Below, piece by piece: positions 1 through 64,000 of a DNA stretch of 64,000 nt. How positions within the stretch are numbered: position 1 is the stretch's first letter; each line of letters opens with the position of its first letter. The notes beneath the pieces were generated by a model. It saw nothing but the letters and a program-made list of their open reading frames with translations, had not been told where the DNA came from and ran no database searches. The DNA lies in assembly GCF_030028105.1 (NCBI RefSeq), contig NC_092398.1, positions 29,048,424 through 29,112,423 on the forward strand, given 5' to 3'. This DNA comes from Mobula birostris (lineage: Eukaryota). Both the position numbers and the translations under genes were made by a program.

Positions 1-132
1 AGGGTGTCAAAGGTTATGGGGAGAAGGCAGAAATACGGGGTTGAGTGGATAATAAATTAGCCATGAAATGCCTAAGCAGGTTCAATAGGCCAAATGGACT
101 AATTCTGCTCCTATAATTTATGATCTTATGGT
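1..132 (+). mobile_element. CR1 LINE 3' end fragment
   Basis: GGTTATGGGGAGAAGGCAG...CTAATTCTGCTCCTAT...TATGATCTTATGG, the same type of 3' end as the other CR1 copies in the window. Confidence 0.75.
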
Positions 133-257
133 GATCAGCATGGTCCACTTGGACAGAAGTGCACATATCTGTATTACTCCATGACTGATGTAGAAAGTGG
201 AGATACTGATCCTCACCAGGTTACAGCAGGATTCTGTTCCTGTGAAACAATCGTAAC
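118..257 (-). CDS. Probable exon 4 (connecting peptide/TM/cytoplasmic) of the MHC gene
   Basis: Acceptor CCCATTCAG|GT continues the frame in phase 1: GYDCFTGTESCCNLVRISISTFYISHGVIQICALLSKWTMLITIRS*. The TM-like stretch contains atypical His and Gln. The last codons and stop overlap a CR1 3' tail. Confidence 0.5.
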
Positions 258-287
258 CTGAATGGGTTGAAAATGTGAACCAGATCA

Positions 288-1594
288 CCCAATCATGTGG
301 CAGCAACTCAATGCATCAAAGCATGCAGACATGGCCAAGAGGTCCAGTTGTTGTTCAGACCAAACATCAGATTGGGGAAGAAATGTGATCTGAGTGACTT
401 TCACCATGGAACCTAGTCAAGATGGTGCCTGTGTACAACGTCCCGCTGGTCAACGTCTATCAGATAGTCAACGAATCTGTTTATTTCACTTCTTTTACGT
501 CTGCTTTTCATCTGAAATGTGTTTCTGGAACTGTTAAGAGCCTGTGATTTACAGTTTAGAGATCAATTGAGTGACCTAGTGCTTTGCTGTCTCCGGGAAG
601 ATTCCAGGAAGCTCAAACAGCCTCAAGGCGAAACAGCTTAAAGATAAGGCAGGGGCCAATGATCGACTCCATTTTGCTGAGTAAAGTGTTGAGGAAGATT
701 GAATCTGAGGCAACTGCTTGCCTTTTGATTGCAGGGATGGACTTCTCTGCTGTGTGGTGCCTTTCACTCTTTGTTGTTGGAGGGCAGGCCTCCGCGTTTG
801 AGTGTTCTCTCTCTCTCTCTCTCTCTCTCGCTCGCTGTTGGTCAGAGGATATTACCAGGTTCTGAATTTATGAATTGGACTATGGACTTCCAGTCTTATG
901 ATTTTTATATTCTATGTTTTCCCCTGTTCTTTCACCTTGTTATTGCAGAGCATGTTTTGTTAGTTTTTTTTTTACATGAGGGAGTGGGATTTAGATGGGT
1001 TGATGTTCTTGTAGCATTTTGATTTTTTTGTGCAGGGTGGGGGTTTGATGTTCCTGTTCAGTTTTGATTTTTTTGTGCAGTGGAGGGGTGGGGGTTTGAT
1101 GTTTATCTTTGAATGACTTCCATGGATTTCTTTTTTTCATGGCTATCTGGAGAAATGAATCTCAGAGTTGAATAATGAACACATAGTTTGATAATAAATG
1201 AACTTTTGAACGATGCTGATGCACGACGGGGTGGTTTGAGTATCTCAGAAATTGTTGAGCTCCCGGGATTTTCAGGGACAAGTCTCGAGAGTTTAAAGTG
1301 AACAGTGTGAAAAACAAACAAAAAAAAATCATTTACTGAGTGGCAGTTGTGGGCAAAAGTGCCTTGTTAGTGAGATTTCAGAGGAGAATGGCCAGACTGG
1401 TTCACGCTAACAGGAACACGACAGTAACTGAAAGAACCGCCTGATACAATGTTGGTGTGCGGAAGAGCGTCACTGAACGCAAACATTTCCAACCTTGAAG
1501 CGGATGAGCTACAGCAGCATAAGACCACAACCTTACACTCAATGGTCACTTTATTATGTAGAGGAGGTGCCTGATAAAGTGGCCACTGAGTGTA
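288..1594. mobile_element. Non-autonomous Tc1/mariner-like element interrupted by an ~800 bp unclassified repeat (~413-1211)
   Basis: Matches the Tc1-like family also at 2445, 15025, 15680 and 43200. The terminal hairpin CACTCAATGGTCACTTTATT...TAAAGTGGCCACTGAGTG is followed by TA. The sequence resumes in register after the inner repeat, which contains (CT)n at about 806-829. Confidence 0.7.
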
Positions 1595-1673
1595 TAATAT
1601 AGTGTTGGACAGAGTGTGAACCAGATCATCACCAGTACACTGCACCCCAAATTACTCAGACTCTGAGCCTTAC

Positions 1674-1955
1674 CCCAAACTGCATGCAGCTTGTCAGGGA
1701 CGCTCAAATGCTCGATTTCACAAGTGTAAGTGTCACCCTTCCCGGGGTCAATTTCGACCTGTAGCCGGACTTGGAACGTCCTATCCCAGTTGGGTAAAAT
1801 TCTCGTCATTAGCACTTCCTGATCGATCGCCACACCATTCCGCAGCCACGTTGCATGGATTTTCTTGGGATAAAATCCATGCACTTGGCATGTCAGGGCC
1901 AAGGTATTCTCTCTGTTCTTCATGTGTCTTGAGGTTATTGTGATAGTTGGCTTCG
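1674..1955 (-). CDS. MHC W-category-like beta chain, exon 3 (Ig C1-set beta2 / alpha3-type domain)
   Basis: Acceptor CACTGCAG|CG, donor TGGG|GTAAGG, 282 nt. Encodes KPTITI...LTCQVHGFYPKKIHATWLRNG...ILPNWDRTFQVRLQVEIDPGKGDTYTCEIEHLSVPDKLHAVW, a canonical MHC C1 domain. Confidence 0.93.
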
Positions 1956-2444
1956 CTGCAGTGGACAGAAACACATTGAAGCTGAACTTGGTTACGGGAT
2001 CAAAAAAAGTAATGAGTAACAGAACTTCAAAGTTCAAAGTATGTTTACTATTAAAGCATGTGTATATTATACAACCTTGAGAATACAGCATGACGGAATG
2101 GAGGAACAGACACAATGGGTCAAATGGTCTAATTCTGTTCCTATGTTTATTCACCTCCCTAGATGCTGCCTGGCCTGCTGAATTTGTGTGGGTGTGTGTG
2201 TGTGTGCTGCTTTGGATTGCCAACATCTGCAGAATCTTTTCTGTTTTGAAACTGTCCCCTGGTCATATGCATCCGACCAGGGGTATGGTTCTTTTAATCA
2301 CTCCCAAGTCACAGGAAAGTTCCAAGGACTGGTGGCAACCCAAAGTTTCCATAAGGTGGAAATACTTAGAAATGAAAATTTGCATGGTGCAGTTAATTAG
2401 CTGCAGGTTAGTGCAGATCAGAATCAGGTTTAATATCACTGACA

Positions 2445-5400
2445 TACACTCAGTGTCCACTTTATTATGTACACTGCTCATTAATATAAACTTCTAATCA
2501 GCCAATCATGTGCCAACAACTCAATGCATAAAAGCATGCAGACGTTGTCAAGAGGTTCAGTTGATGTTCAGACCAAACATCAGAATGGGGAAGAAATGCA
2601 ATCTAATTAACTTTGACCATGGACCAGATGGGGTGGTCTGAGTATCTCAGAAACTGCTGATCTCCTGGGATTTTCATACACAACGGTCTCTCGAGTTCAC
2701 AGAGAATGGTGCGACAAAGAAAAAACATCCAGTGAGCAGCAGTTTTGTGGGTGAAAGCACCTTGTTAATGAGAGAGGTCAGAGGAGGATGGCCAGACTGG
2801 TTCAATCTGATAGGACGGGGACGGTAACTCAAATCACCATGTGTTACAGCAGTGGTGTGCAGAAGAGCATCTCTGAACGTACAACATGTCACACCTCAAA
2901 GTGACTGAGCTGCAGCAGTGATTCCCAAGGGGAGTGCGGTATTGTATGATGTCATGGGGGAAGAGTGGCACCCCTACTTGAGGCTCGAGACCTGACCGAC
3001 CGTTAGTAGACCAGGCACTTCTGAAATAAAGGATGAGGCACTGGAACACAGGAAGAACCACAGCTCAGCAGGCGGTGAGCACCGTCATCACAACAAGTCT
3101 GAAATTTGACAATCTCATCCAACCTTACCAACCAAACAGACATTATTGAGGATGCATAAATTAGCAAACAGGGTGTCCAACAATTACCCTTGACTGGCAG
3201 CACGGAACGAGTTCGTGCAATTTAACGGTTGATAGGTCAAGTACACCCTCTCCACCTTCGTGACAGATCTATGGAAAACAGGTCGCGCAACGATACAGCG
3301 CTGGCCGGAACCAAATGGTGAAATAGAGTCAATCAGTGAACCTGTCAACCCTGAGGAATCCTCTTGAGGTGTTCAAAGTGACCTCGGCTTCATATGTGCG
3401 GTCAAGAACCATCTTTGGGGATTACGAAACTTTACGTGACTGGTTAATCGTGCTGACTGGAATAGTAAGAAGGTAGCTTCCCAAACACAAGCTCTGTCCC
3501 GACTAACATTCGATTCCAATCTGAATCCTTGTCAATGTAATTTTTGCAGTTGTGATCGTCTTCACCTTTGCCTCGCTGTTCCTTTGCGTGCCACTGCCAT
3601 CGTTCCATCCGTGTCAACTCACTGCCATCAACATCCGATAGGCATTCCCAGTGGTGTTAATTTATTATTTTAATTTAGCCCCGTTAACAATGGGTAAGTA
3701 TGTACGGTGCGATCTCTACAAGCTTGAAGGCGGTGAAGCCTTGAATTCTAATCCTGCTAAGAAACAGAAACTACACAAAGTGTGCCAATACAAAGTTACA
3801 TACCTGAAATATGGTTTTATTCCATCGCATTAGATCAGCAGCGCCCCATGTTTCCTATTTGTAATACTGTACTGTCTAATGAATCCATGAAACCATCAAG
3901 ATTGCAGGAATGCTTCTGCAAAAGACACCCTGAAAAGGCTACTTATGATATTACTCGGTTCCAGAAGATGAAAGAAGCATTGCAAAACCATTGCACATTC
4001 GAGTCATTTGCCAAGAAATGACTTTGTTTGTGGTCTCGTTGCTTCTTATATCATTTCCAAAATGATAGCAAGGTGTGGAAAATCTCATACAATTGGTGGA
4101 AGATTAATAATGCTTGCTGTATCAGAAGTGCTTCACCACTGTTCTCAAAATGGAAACCAGTATTTTAAAATAATTTCCTCTAAGCAATAGCTCATCGTAT
4201 TGATGAAATGAGTGAAGAGGTGGAATATCAACTTTGCACAGAGCCACAAAAAACAGAATTTGGGATATAACTGGATGAGTCAACTGTGCAAGGCAACGCG
4301 GCATTGCTAATGGCATCTGTACGGTTTATCTAAAAGGGAAAAGTTTAGGAAGCGATTCTCTTTTGTAAAAAGTTAAAAACATATCAACAGAGAATCAATC
4401 TATGATGACCTCAAAATGTATATTGAGGATGAAAGTATTTCAATTAGGAACATGATTTCTTGTACAACAGATGGAGCACCATATATAACAGGTTGCCATG
4501 CTAGTTTAGTGGCATTAATGAAAAAATAAATTCCAAGTTTGTTTACATCCATTGTGTAATTCATCGTCAACACCTCGCAGCCAAAAACCTCAGCTAGTGA
4601 CTTTTTTCAAGCATGACTCCTGTAATAGCTGCTATCAACAAAATTAAAGATCATCCATTAAATAGCAGAATATTTCACCATTTATGCCAAAATATCAATG
4701 CAGAGATTGAACGCTTGTTTCTTCACACTGAAGTGTGTCCGCTGTCAAAAGCTGCTCCTTAAAACACTTCTTTGATCTTTTTGCACTGGTGGAAGTCAAC
4801 GAGATTGGACTTCTATATGGAGATGTGGCAAACCAAGCCGATCAGTATGACAAACTGAATATTCTAAATATGAAACTGCTGGGTGAAAACTTAAATTTAA
4901 TCCAGACAAAAAGTTGAATGCCCACTTTTATCAGAAAATTGAAAATATGTAAGCAAAACATTGGGAGAAGAATGTTCTCAGTTTCCCTGCATGGAAAGTA
5001 TGGCACTCTCTTTCACAGATGGTGATTTGCAAGAGTGCTCCTTACACCTGCAGTCACCGAAGAAAGATTTTCAGAATTGATTCAAGGATTTGAACGCTCC
5101 AGAAATTCCGGACTGGGTTATTACCCTATTCCTTTGCAAGGTGGAAGAACAGGAAGAGAGCTTGCAAGAAAAAATTATCAAAATTCAGAATAAGGGAGAA
5201 GCAAAAATGCTTATTTAAAAACATCGACTTTTGTGCTATGTGGCTAGAGGGTCATATGAAGTTTCCTTGTCTTTGAAGATGAGCCAAACTGCTCTTCATT
5301 GTATTTCTATCCTCCTACCTTATTGAAAGTGCAGTGAACCACAACCTCACAAAAAACAGAAACCACTTGGATATTGGCATGCGTGGGGACTTAAGGCTTT

Positions 5401-5768
5401 TGCTGTCACAACTTGAACCAGATATTTCAACTCTTGCTAAAAACCTTCAAGCTTAAGGATCACATTCATGTCAAAGCTGCTGTACAGTGTGTAGGTACTT
5501 AGTAAGCTAGTTTTAAAGACCAATAACAATTTAAATCAGAATCAGTTTTCTCGTGTTAGCATATGGTAGACATGTTTTCACACCATGGGGGTGCCAGAAA
5601 GTGCGTTGTGCCTTAAAAGAGCATTAACAAGAATGAAAGTGCTTTAGGGAGGTGTTGGGCTAAAAACAGTTGAGAAACAGTAGGCTACAGCAACAGAAGA
5701 CCACGAACATACACTCAGTTTCCACTTTATTAGCTACAGGAGAAACCTAATAAAGTGGTCACTGAGTA
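2445..5768. mobile_element. Non-autonomous Tc1/mariner-like element split by the hAT insertion (2445-2915 and 5683-5768)
   Basis: TA|CACTCAGTG terminus at 2445. The host sequence stops at GAGCTGCAG (2915) and resumes at GGCTACAGCAACAGAAGACCAC (5683), ending in the same terminal hairpin. Confidence 0.8.
2916..5682 (+). mobile_element. hAT (Charlie/Buster, SCAND3/ZBED8-like) DNA transposon, decayed transposase
   Basis: Fragments include KQKLHKVCQYKVTYLKYGFI, RPMFPICNTVLSNESMKPSRLQ..F.KRHPEK, SYIISKMIARCGKSHTIG, and DGA/CVIHRQHL-type motifs, with many stops and frameshifts. Degenerate TIRs CAGTGATTCCCAA / GTTGAGAAACAGTA. 8-bp TSD AGCTGCAG / GGCTACAG (nnnTAnnn type). Confidence 0.9.
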
Positions 5769-6991
5769 TAAGGTCTTTTGCTGACAAGTTTGCTGTCTTG
5801 TGCCAGCAATATGGTGTAATACATAAAAGGAATAAGTTACAAAAACAAACATATTTAAATGAAATAAATAGTTCGAATAGAGAGCAAAAATAGTGAGGTT
5901 ATGTTCATGGGTTTTTTATGGACTGTTCATAAATCTGATGGGAGAAGGGAAGAAGCTTTTCCTGAATCCTTTAGTGTGTGCCTTCAGGCTCCTGGACCTC
6001 CTCCCTGAAGGGAGCACTGAAAGGCATGTCCTGAGTGGTGAGGGTCTTTAATGATGGATGTTGCCTTTTTGAGGCATCACTCCTTGAAGATTCCTGAATG
6101 CTAAGGAGGCTCGTGCCCATGATGGAACTAATTGAGTTCACAAATTTCTGCAGCTTCTTTCAACCCTTTGCAGTATCTACACCCCCTCCCCCCATGTGCA
6201 GCCAGTTATACCTCTCCACGGTAAATCTGTAGAAATTTGACATACCAAATCTCCTCAAACGCGTAATGAAATATAGCCGCTGTCGTGCCTTTTTGTAACT
6301 GCCTTGACATGTAGGCCCCAGGATAGATCCTCAGAGACATTGACGCCTAATAACTTGAAATTGCTCACTCCCTCCACTTCTGATCCCTCTTTGAGGACTG
6401 GTGCGTGTGTTCCCTTGTTTTGCCCTCTCTGTCAGCCTCTGCCACACAGCCTACTTGAACATCGCTTTGAAAACAAAACTTTAATTCCACTTCCCACTCC
6501 CATGCCATGGCCTCCTCTTCTGTCAGGATGAGGCCGCACACAGGTTGGAGGAGTAACATCTTATATTCCGCCTGGGTAGCCTCCAACCTGATTGCAGGAC
6601 CACCGACTTCCCGAACTTCCAGTAATGCCCCCCCCACTTCATCATTCCCCATTCCCTTTTCCCTCTCTCACCTTACCTGCACATCACCTCCCTCTGGTGC
6701 TTCCCCCCTTTCTTTCTTCCATGCCCTTCTATCCTTTCCTATCAGATTCCTCCTCCTCCAGCCCTGCACCTCTTTTCCCAATCAACTTCCCAGCTCCTTA
6801 CTTCACCCCTCTCCACCTCCTAACTCTGACTCCTCAACTTGTTTCTCCAGTCCTGATGAAGGGTCTCAGCCCGAAACGTTGTCTGTACTCTTTTCCATAG
6901 ATGCTGCCTGGCCTGCTGAGCTCCTCCAGCACTTTGTGGGTGCTGCTTGGATTTCCAGCATCTGCAGATTTTTTTGTGAAAATAAACTTAC

Positions 6992-7249
6992 CCGTCAGAG
7001 TTTGAACAGCCTGGTGAACGATCTCCATGGCAACAGGCATGCTTTCAACACAGCAGGTAACATATTTCATAACCTCCGTATTGCGGTTCAGATCGTCCAT
7101 GTAAGGCTTTACAATTGGATTGATGGCCACAAACTTTCCTGTAGTATAATTAAAGCGAACGGTCGTTTCTCCATTGTAAGCAAACTGCAGGGTAGCCATT
7201 GAAAACTGTGAACCTTTACCAGAGAAAGTCACTTGACCGATGTGCATTC
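6992..7249 (-). CDS. MHC W-category-like beta chain, exon 2 (beta1 / class I alpha2-type membrane-distal domain)
   Basis: Acceptor TTGCCAG|GA, donor ACGG|GTAAGT, 258 nt, phase 1/1. Encodes GMHIGQVTFSGKGSQFSMATLQFAYNGETTVRFNYTTGKFVAINPIVKPYMDDLNRNTEVMKYVTCCVESMPVAMEIVHQAVQTLT, matching the MHC pattern QFAYxG...F...KFVA..P...LN and CVE. Confidence 0.85.
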
Positions 7250-7329
7250 CTGGCAAGCAGATAATAATCGATCCATTAACCAATTGTGAGAGTGAAATGG
7301 CTCATTTTAAAACCTTAAAATTAATCAAC

Positions 7330-8400
7330 CTGAAACAACAAATTTGTCTCTCCCTTCTGTGGATTCCACACCATTCTGACAGCAAAAAGGTGCCACTTCT
7401 CCAGAGCCACCTCTCCCTCCCACGGTAAAACTCCAATAGTTGGGATTTGGTGGTGGTGCTGTTGACCCTTCACCCTCACTCTCTGCACCCACCTCTTCCT
7501 CAGTTCGATGCCCACGTCCCCACCCACCTCTTTGCCCAAACCCCTCCTCGCCATTGAAGTGCCCTTCCCTCAACACCTCTCCCCACAGACATCTCTCCTC
7601 ACCGTCCACACCCAACACTCCACTCACTCCCTCTCTCCCTACCCACCCTCAGTGACTACTTCCCTCCCTCCCCAAACATCCTTGGCGGTCCCTCCCCACC
7701 CGCTCAAACATGGCCCCATCCCCTCCCAGTCTCCGTGCCCTCTATCCTCCCCACTCTCTGCACCCCAACAACTCCACTCCTCAGCCTTCAGTTCCACACG
7801 TAGCACCTCTCTCCCTCCCCACACACCTTTGGCACACTATATCCTCTCCCACACACTCATCCCCAATATCCCCACCCCTTCCACCACCCCCTCAACAATA
7901 CTCAATTCACCTCCACTCCCTCCCTACCTATTCTCTCTCAGTGCCTCCTTCCCTTCCCATGCCCATTCGTTGCCCTCTCCCCTCTCCTTTGGAACGCCCT
8001 TCCCTCCCATTGTGCCCAGTCCACTACCCTCCATTGGCGCCCCCTCCTCCCCAGCTTCCCTTTGCACTCCCTCCCCACCCTCCATTGGCACCCTTCTCCT
8101 CAGCTCTCCACCCTCTTTGGTGCTCACTCTCCACCCTGCCTCAATGTCACTCCACTCTCCTCCCCACCCTCTATCGGTACTCATTCCCCTCCTCTCCCCT
8201 CTTAACCCTTCCTCAGTTCCCCTCCCCACCCTCCCCTGGTGCCGCTCCTCTCTCCACCTTCTTTCAGCGAGGTCTCCCCTTCCCTCCTGACCTTTACCCT
8301 CCCTCCCTAGTTGCCCCCTTCCCTTTCTTTCCACCCTCACTATACCTCCCTACCCTCCATCGGTGCCCCCTCCCCCGGCGCCTCCCATCCCTGGGGCGCT
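7330..8400. repeat. C-rich low-complexity tract in MHC intron 1
   Basis: The plus strand is overwhelmingly C/T with very few G. It generates the spurious Pro-rich ORFs 7508-8639. Confidence 0.9.
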
Positions 8401-8790
8401 GCGCTCCTCACCCAGGGCAATGGAGCCGTTGTGGAGGAGGAGGAGGAGGAAGGCGGCGAGCAGAGAGGGAGAGCGGCGTCGCCTCACGCCGGCCGGCGGC
8501 TCCTGAGACAGCGGGAGGAGCAGCTGGTTCACGGTTCGCGGAGACGGCATCATTCCCCACATCCCTTCCGCCGAAGGCTGAGGACCTCGTCACACAGCCG
8601 CTACGCGCGAAACCGATCGCCAGCCGGCAGGTCCCGTAACGGGAGGCGATCGATGTAGAAGTTTCCCCTGCTGCGTGGGCGGCCGCTGCCACAGACAGGC
8701 GGGGCGAGGCGGGAGGGAACGCCTTCTGTTTCAACTTAGCGCTTTATTCTCAACGAGACTCAACAACACACGACGAAAGGTGATTGGGAT
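8380..8790 (-). promoter_or_regulatory. CpG-island promoter/exon 1 region of the MHC gene
   Basis: High CpG density in a CpG-poor background, GC-box-like GGGGCGAGGCGGG at about 8700, CCAAT (plus-strand GATTGG) at about 8782, kB-like GGGGAAACTTC (minus) at about 8658-8668. Confidence 0.6.
8412..8562 (-). CDS. MHC W-category-like beta chain, exon 1 (leader peptide)
   Basis: ATG 8562 (alternative ATGs 3-4 codons in) gives MWGMMPSPRTVNQLLLPLSQEPPAGVRRRRSPSLLAAFLLLLLHNGSIAL-G. It has a hydrophobic h-region, ends at a phase-1 donor CTGG|GTGAG, and lies in the most conspicuous CpG-rich patch of the first 13 kb. Confidence 0.75.
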
Positions 8791-9480: not shown

Positions 9481-10353
9481 GGGGGGGGGGTGTTGTGTGG
9501 AAGGGGGCTACCAGGTAAGAGGGGATAGCAGGTGTTTAGATGGTAGACAGGTGGGTAGTGGATGGGGGTATGCCAGACAAAGGGGAAGGTGTGAGTTTCC
9601 TCCATTTTCTATTCCTATCAGATTCCTTCTTTTTCAGCCTTAACCTCCTCCACCAATCACCTTCCAACTTCTTATCTCAAAACCTCAACCCTTCCCACCC
9701 ACCTTCCCCCTCTCCTGGCCTCACCTATCACCTGCAAGCATGTACACCTTCCCCACCTCCCACCTTCTTATTCTGGCTTCTTCCCAACACCCCCCCCCCC
9801 ACCTTCCTTTCCAGTCCTGATGAAGGTTCTCAGTGTGAGACGTTGATTGTCCATTTCCCTCTCTAGACATTGCCTGACCTGATGGGTTCCTCCAGCATTT
9901 TGTGTGTCTTACATTTATGTAGCACCTTTGAAGACATTCCGTGTCAATTAAATGTGTCATCAAATGCTCAGGAGGCCGATGGCACCTAATGGCAACTCCT
10001 TCACTTGCATCTTTAGAAACAGCTCTATTTATTTCTTTTTTTTTTCCTTTTCAGGGTTCTTTTGAAGATCCTGACCTGGAGTGACACACTGACTTCGGTT
10101 CTTTGCGGGAATGGGACCCGCTGTCGGGGTCTCACGACTGGCTGCTTTTCGATATGCCACGGACGCATCCTGGAAGACTCGCGCACCTTTGGTGTGCCGG
10201 ATTCCGGTGGCTCTGGAGGCAGACGGACTCGAGGTCGGTGCTGGTGCCTGGTGTATTGTGGGAGACCAAAGGGCGCAGAGCACGGAAAAAGCAACACAGT
10301 AGACTTTTAAAAACGCAAACACGAGAGAATCTGCAGATGCTGGAATAGCAAGC

Positions 10354-10583
10354 TGTGGTAAACCATATATATTGTAACTGGGTTACCTGTCTGGACACGC
10401 CCCTCTGCTGACTGCTCCTGTGGTTCCTCCCAGAGACCCCTGAATAAAGGCGATTGTACCATTGCTCCTCCTCTCAGGCCAGGGGCAGATACTCAGCATG
10501 GTGGAGGTCACACTTTACTGCTAATAAAAGCCTTTCAGTATTTACTCTACTTCCAGTCTTTTGGAGTTATTGATGGTGCATCA
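10354..10583 (+). mobile_element. Solo LTR (Gypsy-type), 230 bp
   Basis: TG...CA termini, internal AATAAA, perfect 5-bp TSD CAAGC (10349-10353 / 10584-10588). Confidence 0.85.
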
Positions 10584-39059: not shown

Positions 39060-42000
39060 CTCCAGACATTAACCGGGCAACAGCCTCCTCCAGACGTTAG
39101 CCATTCCCCTAAATAATAAGTGTACCGTCCTGGATACTGTTGGTGGGGACGACCGACCAGGTGTGAGCCACGGTGACAGGGTCTCCGGCACTGAGTCTGA
39201 CCCGGTGGTGCAGAAGGATGGGACGGAGAAGAGGAGAACTGTCGTCATTGGAGACTGTATAGTCAGGGGAGCCGAAAGGAGATTTTGTGGACGTGAGAAG
39301 GACACCCGCATGGTTTGTTGCCTCCCGGGTGCCAGGGTCCGGGATGTCTCTGACAGGGTGCACGGCATCCTGGTACGAAAGGGAGAGCAACCAGAAGTCG
39401 TGATACGTGTTGGGACCAACGACATAGGCAGGAAGAGGGATGAGGTCCTGAAGTGTCAGTTTCGGTGAACTAGGCAGAAGGCTGAAGAACAGGACCTCAA
39501 GGGTGGCGTTCTCAGGATTGCTGCCAGTGCTACGTGACAGTGATGGTAAGAATTGGAGGAGATGGCAGTTGAATGTGTGGCTGAGGAGTTGGTGCAGGGG
39601 GCAGGGTTTTAGATTTTTGGATCATTGGGATCTCTTCTGGGGAAGGTGGGACCTCTACAGATTGGGTGGGTTGCACCTGAACTCGAGGGGGAGCAATATC
39701 CTTGCAGGTAGGTTTGCTAGCGTGGTTCTGGAGGGTTTAAACTAATTTGCAAGGGGGATGGGACCCTGAGCGATAGAGCAGTGAAAGAAGTGCACGGATT
39801 AAAGCCGGATCTAACGTATAGAGAGGCTTTGAGGAAAGAGAAGCAGAATAAATGGTGTAAAGACAGTAAGGTAGAAGGGCTGAAGTGTGTGTATCTCAAT
39901 ACAAGAAGCATCAGAAACAAAGGTGATGAACTGAGAGCTTGGATACATACATGGAATTATGATGTAGTGGTCATTACAGAGACTTGGTTGGCACCAGGGC
40001 AGGAATGGATTCTCAATATTCCTGGATTTCAGTGCTTAAAGAGGGATAGAGAAGGGGGGAAAAGGGGAGGAGGGGTGGCATTACTGGTCAGTGATACTAT
40101 TACAGCTACAGAAATGGTGGGTAATGTAGCAGGGTCCTCTTTTGGGTCAGTATGGGTTGAAATCAGGAACAGGAAGGGAACAGTTACTCTATTGGGGGTA
40201 TTCTATAGGCCCCCTGGTAGCAGCAGAGATACAGAGGATCAGATTGGGAGGCAGATTTTGGAAAAGTGCAAAAATAACAGGGTTGTTATCATGGGTGACT
40301 TTAACTTCCCTGATATTGACTAGCACCTGATTAGTTCCAAGGGGTTAGATTTGGGCAGATTTTGTTAAGTGTGTCCAGGACCGATTCCTGTCACAGTACG
40401 TGGACAGGCCGACCAGGGGGAATGCCATACTAGATCTGGTACTAGGTAATGAACCGCGTCATGTCACAGATCTCTCAATGGATTTGCATCTGGGGGACAG
40501 TGACCACCGCTCCCTGGCCTTTAGCATTATCATGGAAAAGGATAGAATCAGAGAGGACAGGAAAATTTTTAATTGGGGAAGGGAAAATTATGAGGCTATA
40601 AGGCTAGAACTTGCGGGTGTGAATTAGGATGATGTTTTTGCAGGGAAACGTACTATGGACATGTGGTCGATGTTTGGAGATCTCTTGAAAGTTGTTAGGG
40701 ATAAATTTGTCCCGGTGAGGAAGATAAAGAATGGTAGGGTGAAGGAACCATGGGTGACAAGTGAGGTGGAGAATCTAGTCAGGTGGAAGAAGGCAGCATA
40801 CATGGGGTTTAGGAAGCAAAGATCAAGTGGGTCTATTGTGGAACACAGGGAAGCAAGAAAGGAGCTTAAGAAACGGCTGAGAAGAGCGAGAAGGGGGCAT
40901 GAGAAGGCCTTGGAGAGTCGGGTAAAGGAAAACCCCAAGAAATTCTTCAATTATGTGAAGGAAAAAAGGATGACAGGTGTGAATATACGACCAATTAGAG
41001 ATAAAGGTGGGAAGATGTGCCTGGAGGCTGTGGAAGTCAGCGAGGTCTTCAATGAATACTTCTCTTCGGTATTCACCAATGAGAGGGAGCTTGATAATGG
41101 TAAGGACAATATGAGTGTGGTTGATGTTCTGGAGCATATTGATATTAAGGGAGAGGAGGTGTTGGAGTTGTTAAAATACCATAGGACGGATAAGTCCCCG
41201 GGGCCTGATGGAATATTCCCCAGGCTGCTCCACGAGGCGGGGGAGGAGATTACTGAGCCTCTGGTTAGGATCTTTATGTCCTAGTTGTCCACGGGAATGG
41301 TACCGGAGGATTGGAGAAAGGTGAATATTGTCCCCTTGTTCAAAAAAGGTAGTAGGGATAGTCAGGGTAATTATAGACCAGTGAGCCTTACGTCTATGGT
41401 GGGAAAGCTGTTGGAAACGATTCTTAGGGATAGGATCTATGAGCATTTAGAGAATCATGGTCTGATCAGGGACAGTCAGCATGGCTTTGTGAAGGGCAGA
41501 TCATGTCTAACAAGCCTGATAGAGTTCTTTGAGGAGATGACCAGGCATATAGATGAGGGTAGTGCAGTAGATGTGATCGATATGGATTTTAGTAAGGCAT
41601 CTCACAAGGTTCCACACGGTGGGCTTATTCAGAAAGTCAGAAGACATGGGATAAAGGGAAGTTTGGCCAGGTGGATTCAGAATTGGCTTGCCTGCAGAAG
41701 TTAGAGGGTCGTGGTGGAGGGACTACATTCAGATTGGAGGATTGTGACTAGTGGTGTCCCACAAGGATCTGTGCTGGGACCTCTACTTTTCGTGATTTTT
41801 ATTAACGACCTGGATGTGGGGGTAAAAGGTTGAGTTGGCAAGTTTGCAGACGACAGAAAGGTTGGTGGTGTTGTAGATAGTGTAGAGGAGCTAGGACTTT
41901 ACTCTTTGGAGAGAAGGCGGGTGAAAGAAGACATGATAGAAGTGTACAAGATAATAAGAGGAATAGATAGAGTGGATAGCCAGCGCCTCTTCCCCAGGGT

Positions 42001-49789: not shown

Positions 49790-50395
49790 CCCTTTGTCAT
49801 GCCCTTTGGGATGTAATGCTGAAATTGTACAAGGCATTGGTGAGGCCAAATTTGGAGTATGCGTACAGTTCTGGTCACCGAATTATAGGAAAGATGTCAA
49901 CAAAATTGGGAGAGTACAGAGAAGATTCACTAGAATGTTACCTGGGTTTCATCTCCTAAGTTAGAGAGAAAGGTTGAACAAGTTGGGTCTTCACACTTTG
50001 GAGCGTAGAAGGTTGAGAGGGGACTTGATAGATGTGTTTCAAATTCTGAGGAGGATAGATAATGTTGACGTGGATAGGCTTTTTCCATTGAGAGTGGACG
50101 AGATTGAAACAAGAGGACATGACTTGAGAGTTAAAGGGCAAAAGTTCAGGGGAAACATGAGGGGGAACTTCTTTACTCAGAGAGTAGTAGCTGTGTGGAA
50201 CGAGCTTCCAGCAGAAGTGGTTGGGGCAGGTTCGATGTTGTCATTTAAAGTAAAATTGGATAGATATATGGACAGGAAAGGAATGGAGGTTAATGGGGTC
50301 GGTGGGACTAGGTGAGCACAAGAGTTTGGCACGGACTAGAAGGGCCCAGGTGACCTTTTTCCGTGCTGTAATTGTTATTTGGTTATATGAACTCC
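49790..50395 (+). mobile_element. CR1 3' fragment
   Basis: MLKLYKALVRPNLEY...LERRRLRGDLI...GNFFTQRVV. Confidence 0.9.
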
Positions 50396-51573
50396 AACCC
50401 AAGCTATATTCCACAGATTCTCCTCTGCACGTAACACAACGGATTCGCATCCTCCTTTACGCTGGTGATCATAATGACACATAGGATTCTAAAGAGGGGT
50501 AAAAAATGTCATGTAATGACCCACCAAAAAGTTCACGTTCGTGAATCCATGTACGCGCCTGGGAAGGACAGCATTTGGTATCGTTCATCTCCACACTATA
50601 GTCCTGTCTGTTATTTTCACGGATCCGTGGACTAAGACTCCTGCACCCTCTGTTAACCTGTATTCATTCAATGTCCGTATATACCTGTGAACTATTCTTG
50701 TTGGAATATAATACCATTTTCGAAAATCCCGTCGACGTTTCTAAGAGATCTATGTCCTGCTGTAGCATCAGAAGCTTCACGTTCTTCACACTACTGAGAT
50801 GCACAGCATTTATTGAGTGTTTCTGCTGTCTAATTTATTTCCACCGCTGATTTACTAAAGGTCAGGTCACTCGTCTGAGTGCTCCTTGTACCATGTAACC
50901 CAGCACTACCTGTCGCATGGTCGAGTGGTCGACGACTACGGAGGCTTGCCTGATGAGGAGGGTGGTTGGACACCCTGAAGAACGAAAAACAAAACCTGTC
51001 AAAGAGCGGATGAACCCTCTCCTGGAGTCAACGGCCATCTAGCAAACACGTGCTGAAGCGCGGAAAGGGCATCCCTTACATCGAAGCTTGGTCTGGCCAT
51101 TCACCGCAACAAAACCTCCCCCAGCCGTCGTGGACCCCACCATGCCGCTGTATCAGGAGGGGATGTCGAGAGGGTGGGTCTCGACCTGTGGAACCCCCTA
51201 CTCACCTAAAATTCATTCACGCACACGCTGTTCCTTTCTGAGGAGGGAGGTCAACCCCACTAGCTGACTGAAAGGAACCTTGCCCATCCTCTGGGTCTCC
51301 CCCACCCTGTCTTTCTTCCCGGGCCTCCTGTCCCATGATCCTCTCGTATCCCTTTTTGCCAATCACCCGTCCAGCTCTTGGCTCCATCCCTCCCCCTCCT
51401 GTCTTCTCCTATCATTTTGGATCTCCCCCTCCCCCTCCAACTTTCAAATCCCTTACTCACTCTTCCTTCAGTTAGTCCTGACGAAGGGTCTCGGCCTGAA
51501 ACGTCGACTGCACCTCTTCCTACAGATGCTGCCTGGCCTGCTGCGTTCATCAGCAACTTTGATGTGTGTTGCT

Positions 51574-52322
51574 AGGAAAAGGGGAGGTGCAACGAGACCT
51601 GGGTGTCATTATACACCAGTCATTGAAAGTGGGCATGCAGGTACAGCAGGCGGTGAAAAAGGCGAATGGTATGCTGGCATTTATAGCGAGAGGATTCGAG
51701 TACAAGAGCAGGGAGGTACTACTGCAGTTGTACAAGGCCTTGGTGAGACCACACCTGGAGTATTGTGTGTAGTTTTGGTCCCCTAATCTGAGGAAAGACA
51801 TCCTTGCCATAGAGGGAGTACAAAGAAGGTTCACCAGATTGATTCCTGGGATGGCAGGACTTTCATATGAAGAAAGAATGGATGAACTGGGCTTGTACTC
51901 GTTGGAATTTAGAAGATTGAGGGGGGATCTGATTGAAACGTATAAAATCCTAAAGGGATTGGACAGGCTAGATGCAGGAAGATTGTTCCCGATGTTGGGG
52001 AAGTCCAGAACGAGGGGTCACAGTTTGAGGATAAAGGGGAAGTCTTTTAGGACCGAGATTAGGAAAAACTTCTTCACACAGAGAGTGGTGAATCTGTGGA
52101 ATTCTCTGCCACAGGAAACAGTTGAGGCCAGTTCATTGGCTATATTTAAGAGGGAGTTAGATATGGCCCTTGTGGCTACAGGGATCAGGGGGTATGGAGG
52201 GAAGGCTGGGTCAGGGTTCTGAGTTGGATGATCAGCCATGATCATAATAAATGGTGGTGCAGGCTCGAAGGGCCGAATGGCCTACTCTTGCCCCTATTTT
52301 CTATGTTTCTATGTTTCTATGT
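51574..52322 (+). mobile_element. CR1 3' fragment, young
   Basis: RDLGVIIHQSLKVG...LVRPHLEYCV...NFFTQRVVNLWNSLP, (TTTCTATG)n tail; nearly identical to 53776-54574. Confidence 0.95.
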
Positions 52323-53775
52323 ATCATCATCCTATGGGATGTATAGCCAGAGAGAGAGAGAGACTAAAGATCTATTCTGCTTAGCTTAGACAACACAATG
52401 TATGCATAATGTTTGCTCTTTAAGCATGTCCGAATAGAGTGGGCACCCCATCTTCTGTACTCGACGATTTGACTTATGAAGGCCAATGTCCCAAAAGCAT
52501 CATTTTCGTGAACCTCATATGGACTCTCACTAGTGCTTTAAAAAGTTTCAACATTGCATTGTTGCTTTTCTATTCTAGTCCTCTGGAAATAAAAGCTAAC
52601 ATCGCAGTTGCTTTCCTCACCACAGACTCAACATGCACAATAACCTTCAGGGATTCGTGCACAAGTGCTCCAAGTCCCAAAGGATCTGCTTTTAACATGT
52701 TCTTTCCATTTAGAACATAGTCAAGCCTTTCATTTCTTCTACCAAAGTGCCTGGCCATACATGTCCCGAGACTGTATTCCATTTGCCATTTATTTGCCTA
52801 TTCTCTTAATCAATCTAAGTCCATCTGTAGCCTATCTACTTCCTCAATCTACCCGACCTTCCACCTATCTTCTTATTGCTTGCAGACTTTGCAAAAATAA
52901 AACACCAATTACGTCATCCGAATCATTGTTATATAAGGCGTAAAAAAGAATCGATCTCAATACAGTCTCCCCTGGAGCAAGACTGGCTACCGGCACGTTG
53001 ACGAAACCATGCGGACTACGCCCTATTTAATCAAGTACCCTGAGACCTCATCCTTAACAAAGACCACAATTATCTCCCCAACAATGGAGGTCGGACTATC
53101 TGACCTATAGTTTCCTTTTTTCTGCTTCCAGTGACGGAGGATGTGAGGTGACCTGATAGAGGTGTATAAGATGATGAGAGGCATTGATCGTGTGGATAGC
53201 CATAGGCTTTTCCCCCACTGCTGAAATGGCTAGCACGAGAGGGCACAATTTTAGGGTGCTTGGAAGTAGGTACAGAGGAGATGTCAGGAGAACGCAGAGA
53301 TTGGTGAGTGCATGGATTAGGCTGCTGGCGACCGCGCTGGAGGCGGGTACAATAGGGTCTTTCATGAGACTCCTGGATAGGTAATGGAGCTTAGAATAAT
53401 AGAGGGCTATGGGTAACCCTAAGTAATTTCGAAGATAAGGGCATATCCGGACAGCTTTGAGGGCCGAATGGCCTGCGTTGTGCTGTAGGTTTTCTATGTT
53501 TCTCTCCTATATTGAAGAGTGGAGAGGCATTTGCAAGCTCCTAGTCTGTGTCCAGTCCTGTCCCTAACTCTAGTCCAGTCCAGTTCCCAGTACTTCAGTG
53601 TCTGTGTCTTGCATTTGCGTCCGCCACCAGCGCCCACTGCCCCCCCCCCCATTATGACAGCATACGCCGTCACCAATAGAACGTACAATATTCATAGAGA
53701 CGGCTGCGGGAACTGAAACCCCGTCTGATGCGCTGTGAAGCGATGTGTGAAAGGCTACGCTAATTTTTCAACGCG

Positions 53776-54574
53776 GTGGGCGGCTCTGATAGGAAAACAG
53801 ATTATTATCTGAATGGTGGCCGATTAGGAAAAGGGGAGGTGCAACGAGATCTGGGTGTCATTATACACCAGTCATTGAAAGTGGGCATGCAGGTACAGCA
53901 GGCGGTGAAAAAGGCGAATGGTATGCTGGCATTTATAGCGAGAGGATTTGAGTACAGGAGCAGGGAGGTACTACTGCAGTTGTACAAGGCCTTGGTGAGA
54001 CCACACCTGGAGTATTGTGTGCAGTTTTGGTCCCCTAATCTGAGGAAAGACATCCTTGCCATAGAAGGAGTACAAAGAAGGTTCACCAGATTGATTCCTG
54101 GGATGGCAGGACTTTCATATGAAGAAAGACTGGATGAACTGGGCTTGTACTCGTTGGAATTTAGAGGACTGAGGGGGGATCTGATTGAAATGTATAAAAT
54201 CCTAAAGGGATTGGACAGGCTAGATGCAGGAAGATTGTTCCCGATGTTGGGGGAAGTCCAGAACAAGGGGTCACAGTTTGAGGATAAAGGGGAAGCCTTT
54301 TAGGACCGAGATTAGGAAAAACTTCTTCACACAGAGTGTGGTGAATCTGTGGAATTCTCTGCCACAGGAAGCAGTTGAGGCCAGTACATTGGCTATATTT
54401 AAGAGGGAGTTAGATATGGCCCTTGTGGCTACGGGGATCAGGGGGTATGGAGGGAAGGCTGGGTCAGGGTTCTGAGTTGGATGATCAGCCATGATCATAA
54501 TAAATGGCGGTGCAGGCTCGAAGGGCCGAATGGCCTACTCCTGCACCTATTTTCTATGTTTCTATGTTTCTATG
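53776..54574 (+). mobile_element. CR1 3' fragment, young
   Basis: Same subfamily as 51574-52322. Its tail abuts the stop codon of GPCR copy B. Confidence 0.95.
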
Positions 54575-54586
54575 ATTTCTTAGCTT

Positions 54587-55503
54587 TTATTTCCGATGAG
54601 TCTGTCTCACAATGCGGATGAATGGGGATTTCACCACCTCCCACATCTGCTCTCTAAACTTCCTCTGGGTCAAGGCATAAAGAGCCGTGTTTGTGCAGTA
54701 GCTCAGTAGCTGCAGCATGTAGCCCAGCTCCCACATGCTCAAAGGTGGGAATTTAGTTCCAGCGTGAGATATATCAGTAGTGTTATAGTAAGATAAAACA
54801 ACCTCATCTACACAGTGTACACAAACGAAAGCATCCACAACATGATGAAATTCGCCGACACGACCAACAGTAAAGTGAGTGACTTCCTACTGTTCCCCAT
54901 TTCCAGGTCTTTGGAACTATCCCCGCTGTTGCGAGCCCGGAGTCTCTTCCGGGCTCTGCTCGCCACTAACACGTGTCTGATGGTCAAAGCATTGAACAGC
55001 AGAATGACCACAGGCGTGAGGATGTAGCTGCCGAACTCAACTACGTTCCAGGCCACTGAGATCGCGACAGCATATTTTCATTCGCAAAACCAAGGGATGT
55101 TAGAAAGCTCGTAGGGTCCTGAGAGCAAAACAATACCAGAGAATGTTCTTGAAACAGCTCAGGGCGGACACAGTCCCCAGAACCACAGCCGCCGTTCTCT
55201 CGGTGCGGTATTTAGCTTTCAGGTTCTGGCAGCGAATAGCCACAAATCGGTCAAAGGCGAACATGACGGTGAACCAGACGGAACAGTCGTTAGCTGCGTA
55301 AAGTAGGGCGGTGTGGATATTACACAGAGGGATGTTCGTCAGGAAATTAAACGCTTCCCAATAAACAATCGGAATCTGCCTCAGTACCAGGTCTATGATA
55401 GCAACTAGGAGATCCGCCATTGCCATGGCCATCAGGTAACGAGTGACGCCTTTATAAACACCGCAGGTTCCCCGCGACAGGATCGCAATCGTCAGCACGT
55501 TCA
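54587..55503 (-). pseudogene. GPR139/GPR142-like GPCR copy B, main exon
   Basis: Acceptor TTCCAATAG|TGAAC, VNVLTIAILSRGTCG...YLMAMAMADLLV...FDRFVAI. Lesions relative to copy C: a 1-nt insertion near 55130, an in-frame TGA near 55080, a 12-nt deletion, TAG replacing a Trp codon near 54810, and a further frameshift. Confidence 0.93.
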
Positions 55504-62790: not shown

Positions 62791-63691
62791 TCATCTCACA
62801 ATGCGGATGAATGGAGATTTCAACACCTCCCGCATCTGCTCCCTGAAATTCTTCTGGGTCACGGCGTAAAGATCCGTGTTTGTGCAGCAGCTCAGGAGCT
62901 GCAGCATGTAGCCCAGCTCCTCGTGGTCGAAGGTGGGAACGAGGCATGCATCGAATATGATAAACGAAAAAGAAATGATCGCATCCACACAGTGTGCACA
63001 ACAAAAACCACCCACAACACGATGAAATTCGCCGACACGACCAACAGTAAAGTGAGCGACTTCTTCCGGCTCTGCATCTCCGGGTCTTTGGAACTATCCC
63101 CATTGCTGTGATTCCGGAGTCTCCTCCGGGCTCTGCTCGCCACTAACACGTGTCTGATGGTCAAAGCATTGAGAAGCAGAATGACCACAAACGGGATCAC
63201 AGGCGTCAGGATGTAGCTGCTGGACTCGATTACTGTCCAGGCAACTGAGAACAGAACACCGCTTCTTCCTTGGCAAAACCAAGGGACGTTAATAAGCTGG
63301 TAGTGTCCTGGGAGCAAAAAATACCAAAAAATGTTCCTTAAACAGCTCAGGGCGGCCACAGTCCCCACAACAACAGCGGCCGTTCTCTCAGTGCAGTATT
63401 TAGCTTTCAGATTATGGTAGCGAATCGCCACAAATCGGTCAAAGGTGAACATGACGGTGAACCAGACGGAACAGTCGTTCGCTGTGTAACGTAGGGCAGC
63501 GTGGATATTACACACAGGGATGTTCGTCAGGAAAATAAACACTTCCCAATAAACAATCGGATTCTGCCTCAGTACCAGGTCAAAGATAACAACCAGGAGA
63601 TCCGCTGCTGCCATGGCCATTAGATAACGAGTGACTCCTTTAGAAAGACCGCACTTTCCCCGGGACAGGACCACAATCGTCAGCACGTTCA
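62791..63691 (-). pseudogene. GPR139/GPR142-like GPCR copy C, main exon (one frameshift)
   Basis: Acceptor TCCCAATAG|TGAAC. Open through TM1-TM6 (FDRFVAI, LTPVIPFVVILLLNALT, SLTLLLVVSANFIVLW), then a single frameshift near 62945 before TM7 (ELGYMLQLLSCCTNTDLYAVTQKNFREQ). Exon 1 is probably beyond the window. Confidence 0.88.
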
Positions 63692-64000
63692 CTATTGGGA
63701 TTGAAAGAAACACAGGCATGTCAGTGGGCAAGGAGCAAGGTCAGCAAATCACAGACAGGAAATATGGAATCATGTTTTTGAACCCAGACTGGAAAACTGC
63801 AGTTTTCCAGCATCGGCGATGTCTGCTGGGTATGAGGATTATAGCTCAGTGAAGTCAACAGCGAACTGGAAAATAACGTCGCCACGCCAAATAACGAACA
63901 GCTGCGAAGAAGTGTCCTCGGAATTCGGTGAAGATAAATTTGGAATAGGGCTCGGAATTGGTCATTGAATTGGAATTGCTTTACTATTACCAAACTCGTA

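What the first reader, a model, noticed from the sequence alone, without database searches (positions are those of the whole stretch)
118..8562. Apparently intact MHC gene with class II architecture and class I interface residues (W-category beta chain candidate)
Seen: leader + one membrane-distal exon + one Ig-C1 exon + CP/TM exon, all phase 1 with GT-AG sites and no stops, about 277 aa. This is the layout of a class II beta chain. The residues are class I heavy-chain-like (HLA-A2 numbering): GMHIGQ matches GSHTIQ (Q96), QFAYNG matches QYAYDG (A117, G120), and ILPNWDRTFQ matches class I RPAGD(G/R)TFQ with P235 present and the class II beta NGDW tryptophan absent. Known: this combination defines the W-category described by Okamura et al. 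2021 (PNAS) as a link between class II and class I. Inference: this is a ray/shark WB gene that automated annotation would likely label 'class II beta-like'.
Basis: partly seen in the sequence, partly recalled or inferred. Interest (0 to 1): 0.8.

Follow-up and report, generated by a model that had tools for sequence, protein, structure and literature searches.

The report
Manta ray W-category MHC beta gene

Summary
The window is Mobula birostris DNA. On the minus strand it holds the leader (8562-8412), beta1 (7249-6992) and Ig-C1 (1955-1674) exons of a gene that NCBI already models as "H-2 class II E-S beta chain-like" (P0001, 293 aa). The match is 100% over residues 1-230.

There is no alpha1 exon.

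It is absent from the NCBI model and its orthologues, has no GxxxG, and is held only by DNA-sized runs. The true CP/TM/CY exons lie off-window.

Both domains group with published shark WB_DS1 sequences (support 97/95 and 98/93). AU tests reject grouping with class II beta (p 0.0008) or class I (p 0.0025).

Q6, A32, G35 and P57 are present and the class II Trp61 is absent. Position 37 is T and 61 is R. The beta1 disulfide cysteine is missing.

No WA partner gene lies in the 55 kb upstream, unlike in sharks. A cross-species WA/WB model passes its controls.

Verdict: interpretation supported; new member of a known kind; modest interest. The scan had noted this same stretch and its beta2 loop before, and WA remnants on neighbouring DNA.

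The parts
8563..8777 (-). 5' untranslated region / transcription start zone
   Evidence: RNA contigs run upstream of the ATG to 8587 (X5), 8635 (X2) and 8777 (X4). The exact start was not determined.
8412..8562 (-). Exon 1: ATG and a 50-residue leader (long Arg-rich N-region, then the hydrophobic core LLAAFLLLLL), ending in phase 1
   Evidence: Identical to P0001 residues 1-50. Donor is GTGAGG. It joins exon 2 directly in contigs of four runs.
7250..8411 (-). Intron 1: G-rich low-complexity sequence with no MHC-like exon
   Evidence: Contig depth is zero across 7307-8377 apart from a trace in one bin of X1. Only low-complexity ORFs are present.
6992..7249 (-). Exon 2: membrane-distal beta1 domain (86 codons). 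It has Q6, A32 and G35 but T at 37, lacks the N-terminal disulfide Cys, and has CC in the helix.
   Evidence: Pfam MHC_II_beta 27.6 bits and MHC_I 12.7 bits. It groups with shark WB_DS1 at 97/95. Residue table.
1956..6991 (-). Intron 2 (5,036 nt), full of interspersed repeats
   Evidence: Skipped by contigs of all four runs; ends read CT..AC on the + strand, which is GT..AG on the gene strand.
1674..1955 (-). Exon 3: membrane-proximal Ig C1-set beta2 domain (94 codons) with the loop P57-N-W59-D-R61
   Evidence: Pfam C1-set 62.2 bits. Identical to P0001 residues 137-230. It groups with shark WB_DS1 at 98/93. Contig pieces stop exactly at 1674.
1..1673 (-). First part of intron 3; the gene runs off the window here
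   Evidence: The P0001 C-terminus has no match in the window. The NCBI gene spans 18,426 bp.
118..257 (-).
   Evidence: Not in P0001 or any orthologue. No GxxxG and weak hydropathy. It lies next to a repeat copy at 284-410. It is held only by DNA-sized runs.

Best explanation
The stretch is the promoter-proximal part (leader, beta1 and beta2 exons) of an expressed W-category MHC beta-chain gene of the WB_DS1 lineage in the giant manta ray. It is one of several WB_DS1-like copies in mobulid and stingray genomes.

Shown: the exon structure, the splicing, the intact reading frame through exon 3, and the family placement.

Inferred: the product is a type I membrane glycoprotein whose CP/TM/CY exons lie off-window. 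It pairs through its beta1 sheet, beta2 domain and GxxxG transmembrane helix with a WA alpha chain, whose Ig domain resembles beta2-microglobulin. The result is a class II-shaped heterodimer held together by class I-type contacts: the WA Trp61 equivalent against beta1 A32/G35, and the WA Tyr8 equivalent against beta2 Pro57.

The missing beta1 disulfide and the lack of classical peptide-anchoring features make a non-classical role most likely. The ligand is unknown.
For: Gene model and species. The translation is 100% identical to NCBI's M. birostris model P0001 over residues 1-230.

Transcription. Spliced contigs in four RNA-like runs of one study carry both junctions and no extra exon. One contig is 1,843 nt, with 872 nt beyond exon 3.

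Nearest relatives. Among 1.84 billion representative proteins, the best non-batoid matches are shark proteins that carry the published great white shark WB_DS1L and whale shark WB_DS1-like motifs, followed by WB_DS3.

Trees. Batoid plus shark WB_DS1 form a clade at 97/94 (both domains), 97/95 (beta1) and 98/93 (beta2). AU tests reject a batoid + class II beta clade (p 0.0008) and a batoid + class I clade (p 0.0025).

Residues. Q6, A32, G35 and P57 are present. Trp61 is absent here but present in 13 of 13 class II beta rows. The alignment rows of Okamura 2021 (PMC8713811, Datasets S1-S3) line up with WB_DS1 in beta1, beta2 and TM.

Fold. The AF2 model has pLDDT of about 79-96 across most of beta1 and beta2 (about 56 at the N-terminal end of beta1) and matches class II beta chains over about 180 columns, TM-score 0.72-0.80 by target.

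Pairing. The complex test with zebra shark WA_DS10-like (P0179) scored 0.71 against a best control of 0.02. The runs agree in at least 53% of contacts and the partner's pLDDT is at least 78. The mark was reached by 51 of 78 solved complexes and 2 of 108 mismatched pairs. WA W168 touches I54/A74/G77/E78/T79, and WA Y117 touches L190 (next to P191 = P57); P191 itself is touched by WA 131/133/173.
Against: No WA gene lies head-to-head. tblastn with zebra shark WA exons finds nothing in the 55 kb upstream, whereas in the zebra shark WA sits 671 bp away.

Three residues depart from the pattern. Position 37 is T, not D/E. Position 61 is R, not the usual G. The N-terminal beta1 cysteine is missing, so the domain disulfide cannot form.

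Completeness therefore rests on NCBI's model and on contig lengths.

The reference class I and class II beta rows come from bony vertebrates only; none is chondrichthyan.

The complex pass may reflect the model's memory of solved MHC structures, and it used a shark alpha chain rather than a manta one.

All RNA evidence comes from one study, stored as contigs. Tissue and expression level are unknown.
Confidence: 0.85

Rival explanations
1. It is a conventional class II beta-chain gene, either non-classical (DO/DM-like) or a divergent DAB, and the class I-like residues are convergent noise.
For: Pfam's MHC_II_beta model passes its threshold on exon 2 (27.6 bits against 20.9). Foldseek's top PDB matches are all class II beta chains. 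NCBI names it class II beta-like.
Against: Trp61 is present in 13 of 13 class II beta rows and absent here, while P57 is present. The AU test rejects a clade with class II beta (p 0.0008). Both domains sit with published WB_DS1. By sequence, class I-related MR1 scores about the same as DQ beta in the PDB (77 against 79 bits).
Confidence: 0.04
2. It is a class I heavy-chain gene or fragment whose alpha1 exon was missed or lost.
For: There is a weak Pfam MHC_I match to the alpha2 region (12.7 bits). It has class I-type residues (Q6, A32, G35, P57). Many class I proteins appear among the top 150 hits.
Against: Contigs of four runs join the leader directly to this domain. Intron 1 holds no alpha1-like ORF. 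The off-window TM in P0001 is of the class II beta / WB type, with GxxxG. The AU test rejects a clade with class I (p 0.0025).
Confidence: 0.02
3. It is a genuine WB_DS1-lineage gene, but this copy is a transcribed duplicate that is decaying or changing function. It has been separated from its WA partner and no longer forms the ancestral heterodimer.
For: There is no WA within 55 kb upstream. Partial WB-like models lie on the same chromosome: P0002 (144 aa) and P0005 (no beta1). Earlier scan notes report broken WA and fossil beta1 exons nearby (unchecked). The beta1 disulfide cysteine is lost and positions 37, 59 and 61 are unusual. The variant contigs carry 5 non-synonymous against 3 synonymous differences.
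Against: The frame is intact over 230 codons, and over 293 in NCBI's model. The M. hypostoma orthologue is 93% identical with the same architecture. Splicing is clean in four runs. The interface residues A32, G35 and P57 are kept. Houndshark and great white shark WB_DS1 also lack the cysteine. The modelled complex with a WA chain passes its controls.
Confidence: 0.09

Closest known systems
Shark WB_DS1 / WB_DS1-like (banded houndshark; great white shark XP_041035565.1 = P0161; Okamura et al. 2021, PMC8713811)
   Same: It has the same chain layout: leader, beta1, beta2, CP/TM/CY. It shares the beta1 pattern GxHxxQ...FAY(D/N)G...FNYT and the beta2 pattern AKPxxxIT...GFYP...TWL...LPNxDxTFQ. The TM reads YGYVxGIxxGxxGI. 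Both have P57 and lack Trp61. Clade support is 97/94.
   Different: Identity is only 42%. The ray genes have a 50-residue Arg-rich leader, against about 17 residues in sharks. This gene has R61 and W59 where sharks have G61 and T/A59. The cytoplasmic tail is shorter. The copy number is higher in rays. No head-to-head WA is present here.
[quoted passage not shown]
   Same: This is the closest previously published batoid sequence. It is 65% identical over the 100 residues covered and has the same beta2 and TM motifs.
   Different: The skate sequence was known only as fragments. The manta gene gives a full coding model with transcript support. The skate has F59/G61.
Conventional MHC class II beta chains (HLA-DRB/DQB; Andrias class II beta)
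   Same: Two-domain beta-chain architecture, exon phases, a 282-nt beta2 exon, a GxxxG TM, and the best structural superposition.
   Different: Class II beta has an invariant Trp61, usually lacks P57, and has F/T/I at 32 and R/K at 35. It forms a separate clade.
MHC class I heavy chains, alpha2-alpha3 (HLA-A, MR1)
   Same: Q6, A32, G35 and P57 match, and Trp is absent at 61. PDB sequence scores equal those of class II beta.
   Different: Class I has an alpha1 exon, pairs with free beta2-microglobulin, keeps the alpha2 disulfide and D37, and has a different TM.

Membership tests
W-category beta chain (WB) | Class II beta-type architecture: signal peptide, one membrane-distal domain, one Ig C1 domain, then CP/TM/CY; no alpha1 domain | tested here: met
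   Exons 1-3 are spliced directly in RNA contigs. CP/TM/CY is seen only in NCBI's model P0001, off-window.
W-category beta chain (WB) | Pro57 in the beta2 domain (the class I alpha3 P235 equivalent) | tested here: met
   In the loop LPNWDRTFQ, P191 = P57. P is found at this column in 9/9 batoid, 3/3 shark WB_DS1, 46/48 class I and 3/13 class II beta rows.
W-category beta chain (WB) | No Trp at beta2 position 61 (mostly Gly, as in class I) | tested here: met
   Position 61 is Arg. Trp is found in 13/13 class II beta rows and Gly in 7/9 batoid rows. The usual Gly is not kept in this gene or in its M. hypostoma orthologue.
W-category beta chain (WB) | Class I-type beta1 floor residues Q6, A32, G35 | tested here: met
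   GMHIGQ and QFAYNG are present; the column table shows the contrast between class I/W and class II beta.
W-category beta chain (WB) | Acidic residue at beta1 position 37 (D in class I, D/E in many WB) | tested here: not met
   T in this gene. D is found in 4/9 batoid rows and E/D in shark WB_DS1. WB_DS3 also lacks it, so the feature is not universal in the family.
W-category beta chain (WB) | Groups with published WB sequences in domain-wise phylogeny | tested here: met
   With shark WB_DS1: 97/95 for beta1 and 98/93 for beta2. With WB_DS3 as well: 96/80 combined. The anchor proteins were identified by exact published motifs.
W-category beta chain (WB) | Beta-chain type TM with a GxxxG motif | tested here: met
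   P0001 has YGYVIGIIAGIIGILTAVSGG, which aligns with the published WB_DS1 TM rows. This part is encoded off-window. The GxxxG criterion is from PMC13399432.
W-category beta chain (WB) | Genomic pairing with a WA gene (head-to-head in sharks, teleosts and coelacanth) | tested here: inconclusive
   No WA exon is found in window 8600-64000. The zebra shark control locus shows WA 671 bp upstream. WA-like exons reported downstream by earlier notes were not checkable.
W-category beta chain (WB) | Forms a heterodimer with a WA chain | tested here: inconclusive
   In silico only and cross-species. Score 0.71 against a best control of 0.02, with class I-type contacts. No manta WA sequence was in hand.
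Conventional MHC class II beta | Invariant Trp61 in beta2 (NGDW) | tested here: not met
   PNWDRT: R at 61, with a Trp two residues earlier.
Conventional MHC class II beta | Falls inside the class II beta clade | tested here: not met
   AU test p 0.0008 against batoid + class II beta.
MHC class I heavy chain | An alpha1 exon between the leader and the alpha2-like domain | tested here: not met
   The leader is joined directly to the domain in four runs.

The most novel reading that the evidence does not exclude
In myliobatiform rays the WB_DS1 lineage has multiplied and at least this copy has been uncoupled from the ancestral head-to-head WA partner. At the same time it lost the beta1 disulfide and remodelled the beta2 interface loop: W59/R61 in M. 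birostris and R59/R61 in M. hypostoma. This could mark a W-category chain that pairs promiscuously with a distant WA gene, or has taken on a new function. If so, rays would be a natural experiment on how MHC chain pairing and interdomain contacts evolve.
Probability: 0.15. Interest if true: 0.55.

Novelty: new member of a known kind. Interest (0 to 1): 0.35.

Why it matters
The W-category is the proposed link between MHC class II and class I. From batoids, only fragments (little skate) were published.

A full, transcribed manta ray WB_DS1-type gene, with several paralogues, extends the family to Myliobatiformes. It gives complete beta1, beta2 and TM sequences for comparative and structural work. 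It also shows that automatic annotation hides these genes under class II, MR1 or zinc-alpha-2-glycoprotein names.

It does not change the concept. Its value is as material for testing WA/WB pairing and the class I-type interfaces.

Tried and rejected
Rejected, for the reasons given under the observation check.
- **WA or other C1-set exons elsewhere in the window.** Motif scans and tblastn with zebra shark WA exons found none.
- **Reading the off-window exons.** The look-up of encoding contigs returned the gene span but no DNA because the file is too large.
- **Neighbour genes of the paralogues and orthologues.** Nothing useful came back. P0002 has only an SRCR neighbour. P0005, P0006, P0010 and P0175 are not on record because they are isoforms.
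- **Finding a manta WA protein.** A search with the zebra shark WA alpha2 domain returned shark WA proteins only.
- **Chondrichthyan class I or class II beta among the 150 best representatives.** Thirty were looked up by name and none was chondrichthyan.
- **P0096 and P0081 (coelacanth) as possible coelacanth WB.** Their N-termini do not match the published coelacanth WB row.
- **Promoter S-X-Y motifs.** Not pursued, because the paper found none in the zebrafish WA/WB promoter.
- **The X4 contig's extra 5' piece (10053-10117).** Left unexplained, because its splice signals read on the wrong strand.
Full report
**What is there.** The window is giant manta ray (Mobula birostris) DNA. A word-based protein search with the Ig exon returns NCBI's model P0001, [quoted passage not shown], 293 aa, on a 40.55-Mb contig of GCA_030028105.1.

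- Exon 1: 8562-8412.
- Exon 2: 7249-6992 (258 nt).
- Exon 3: 1955-1674 (282 nt).

All three are phase 1 with AG/GT borders and no stops. Their translation equals P0001 residues 1-230. Pfam scores exon 2 as MHC_II_beta (27.6 bits, threshold 20.9) with a weak MHC_I alpha2 match (12.7 bits). It scores exon 3 as C1-set (62.2 bits).

**Transcripts.** Four small runs of one study (coded organism A) hold exon 3. Their contigs skip 1956-6991, with GT..AG on the gene strand, in all four runs, which shows they are RNA. Each contig also carries exactly 51 letters between the piece ending at 7250 and the piece starting at 8464. That equals 8413-8463, a CTC repeat the tool masks, so the leader exon is joined directly to the beta1 exon.

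Contig pieces end precisely at 1674 and continue with 391-872 further letters that do not lie on 1500-1673. The donor at 1674 is therefore used.

Run X1 differs from the window only by one synonymous change. X4 and X5 carry N12S, N107Y, Q182R, L185P and G208E plus three silent changes. Three of those states (S12, Y107, E208) are those of the M. hypostoma orthologue P0006.

**The fourth exon is wrong.** P0001 and all ray orthologues continue after ...HAVW with VPKNTYPVYGYVIGIIAGIIGILTAVSGGMIRWK.... That peptide has no match in the window. NCBI's gene spans 18,426 bp, roughly 10 kb more than the window holds.

- It has no GxxxG.
- Its best 19-residue hydropathy is 1.57, against 2.22 for the real TM.
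- It abuts an interspersed repeat; 284-410 is an 87% copy of 2497-2623.
- Its 31-mers are held only by DNA-sized runs, not by the RNA-like runs that hold exon 3.

The gene is therefore cut by the window edge. The protein is 293 aa, not 277.

**Family placement.** HMMER searched 1.84 billion representative proteins. After ray paralogues and orthologues, the best matches were:
- P0015 (basking shark) and its cluster mate P0161 (great white shark XP_041035565.1).
- P0020/P0164 (zebra shark).
- P0026 (catshark).

P0161 contains, letter for letter, the beta1 and beta2 strings printed for "great white shark WB DS1L" in Datasets S1 and S2 of Okamura et al. 2021 (PMC8713811). P0020 holds the whale shark WB_DS1-like beta2 string.

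A profile search added four anchors:
- P0174: Triakis scyllium "MHC class II beta chain like protein", identical over 92 checked residues to the published WB_DS3.
- P0176: great white shark WB_DS3L.
- P0175: sawfish.
- Two cyprinid proteins that match the carp WB beta1 string in 35-36 of 36 residues.

Read against the published alignments, the manta beta1 (GMHIGQVT-FSGKG-SQ...LQFAYNGETTVRFNYT), beta2 (AKPTITITSRHMKNR-ENTLALTCQVHGFYPKKIHATWL) and TM line up with the WB_DS1 rows. They are closest to spiny dogfish and little skate.

**Trees.** I used 78 rows: 9 batoid, 3 shark WB_DS1, 3 WB_DS3, 2 cyprinid WB, 13 class II beta, and 48 class I or class I-like. I left out near-identical cluster mates and repeated domains of fused gene models. 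The trees were built with IQ-TREE under LG+C20+F+G4.

| Data | Clade | Support |
|---|---|---|
| Both domains | batoid + shark WB_DS1 | 97/94 |
| Both domains | the above + WB_DS3 | 96/80 |
| beta1 only | batoid + shark WB_DS1 | 97/95 |
| beta2 only | batoid + shark WB_DS1 | 98/93 |
| beta2 only | all 17 W-category rows | 85/68 |

AU tests reject holding the batoid genes with class II beta (p 0.0008) or with class I (p 0.0025).

There is one limitation. The named class I and class II beta references are from lungfish, coelacanth, amphibians, reptiles, teleosts and mammals. None is chondrichthyan.

**Diagnostic residues.**

| Position | This gene | Class I rows | Class II beta rows |
|---|---|---|---|
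| beta1 6 | Q | Q (42 of 48) | Q (9 of 13) |
| beta1 32 | A | G/A/S | F/T/I |
| beta1 35 | G | G in 47 of 48 | R/K/Q |
| beta2 57 | P | P in 46 of 48 | P in 3 of 13 |
| beta2 61 | R | mostly G | W in 13 of 13 |

The departures from the W/class I pattern are:
- Position 37 is T, not D/E.
- Position 61 is R, where 7 of 9 batoid rows have G.
- Position 59 is W, unique to this gene. The M. hypostoma orthologue has R59 and R61.
- The N-terminal disulfide cysteine is absent and the helix carries an odd CC pair. Houndshark and great white shark WB_DS1 also lack that cysteine.

By sequence, solved MR1 (class I-related, about 77 bits) and HLA-DQ beta (about 79 bits) are equidistant. This fits an intermediate family.

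**Fold and pairing.** An AF2 model built from a 27-row alignment has a mean pLDDT of 74.7. Most of beta1 and beta2 scores about 79-96, falling to about 56 at the N-terminal end of beta1. The secondary structure is the expected MHC pattern of strands, two helices, an Ig sandwich and a TM helix. Foldseek's best PDB matches are class II beta chains over about 180 columns, with TM-score 0.72-0.80 by target.

I then looked for a partner. In the zebra shark locus L001, a 268-aa gene sits head-to-head 671 bp from the WB_DS1-like gene. Its exons match the published WA_DS10-like rows: it has L in place of the Ig core Trp and the loop FSKGWRFQ. tblastn of those exons finds nothing in the manta window apart from a cross-hit on the WB Ig exon. 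A motif scan finds no other C1 exon.

The 55 kb upstream holds LINE fragments and rhodopsin-type GPCR genes instead. Earlier notes of this scan place WA-like exons 18 kb and 61 kb beyond the window start, plus a fossil beta1 exon. I could not check them.

I ran a complex test with the zebra shark WA ectodomain and the manta WB ectodomain:
- Score 0.71, against a best control of 0.02.
- The runs agree in at least 53% of contacts, and the partner's pLDDT is at least 78.
- The mark was reached by 51 of 78 solved complexes and 2 of 108 mismatched pairs.
- WA W168 (the beta2-microglobulin Trp equivalent) touches WB I54, A74 (A32), G77 (G35), E78 and T79 (37).
- WA Y117 (Y8) touches L190, the residue before P191 (P57); P191 itself is touched by WA residues 131, 133 and 173.

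These are the class I-type interfaces the 2021 paper describes. The pass may partly be the model's memory of solved MHC structures, and it used a shark alpha chain. It shows likeness, not binding of a manta pair.

**Conclusion.** The interpretation, a ray WB gene hidden under a class II beta-like label, is supported and can be sharpened to the WB_DS1 lineage.

The mechanism is inferred from the family and from the model, not shown. It comprises a membrane-anchored beta chain, a heterodimer with a WA chain, class I-style interdomain contacts and a non-classical role.

The family has been known since 2021, batoids were already represented by skate fragments, and the gene is already modelled by NCBI. 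This is therefore a new member of a known kind, of modest interest. The open points are the missing adjacent WA gene, the multiplication of WB_DS1-like copies in rays, and the remodelled 59/61 loop.

Noticed in passing
window 62892-63731 (-) and 55100-55543 (-): There is an intact 279-aa ORF for a rhodopsin-type GPCR (Pfam 7tm_1, 59.8 bits), with a truncated paralogue 7 kb away (33.4 bits). Together they look like a small receptor gene cluster upstream of the MHC-like gene.
   Followed up: partly
window 39781-41704 (+): LINE-type retroelement ORFs: endonuclease (Exo_endo_phos, 53 bits) followed by reverse transcriptase (RVT_1, 56 bits). Further RT-tail-like ORFs lie at 49974-54303.
   Followed up: partly
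window 2485-2878, 6425-7015, 9687-10500: Interspersed repeats inside introns 2 and upstream reach summed RNA-contig depths of 10^4 or more. Window 284-410 is an 87% copy of 2497-2623.
   Followed up: partly
window 8777 / 10053-10117: One 1,843-nt contig (run X4) joins 8777 to 10053-10117. The GT..AG signals read on the + strand, the wrong strand for this gene. It may be a chimeric contig or a repeat-mediated join rather than a 5' exon.
   Followed up: no
window 8412-8562 (-): The leader is 50 residues, with a 30-residue N-region containing RRRR before the hydrophobic core. It is conserved in Mobula, Hemitrygon and Hypanus copies. Shark WB_DS1 leaders are about 17 residues.
   Followed up: partly
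window 1674-1955 and 6992-7249 (variants at 1742, 1811, 1820, 7082, 8528): RNA contigs of runs X4 and X5 carry five amino-acid changes. Three of them (S12, Y107, E208) are the states of the M. hypostoma orthologue. This could be allelic or trans-species variation, or the runs may come from another Mobula.
   Followed up: partly
L001 3846-9330 (-) and 10001-18538 (+) (zebra shark JAUUDQ010000214.1): This is a textbook head-to-head WA_DS10-like / WB_DS1-like pair, 671 bp apart. NCBI names the WA chain 'RLA class II DP alpha-1 chain-like'.
   Followed up: yes
database names: W-category chains are named erratically by automatic annotation. The little skate WB fragment is 'MHC class I-related gene protein-like'. 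Cyprinid WB is 'zinc-alpha-2-glycoprotein'. Ray and shark WB carry assorted class II beta names.
   Followed up: partly
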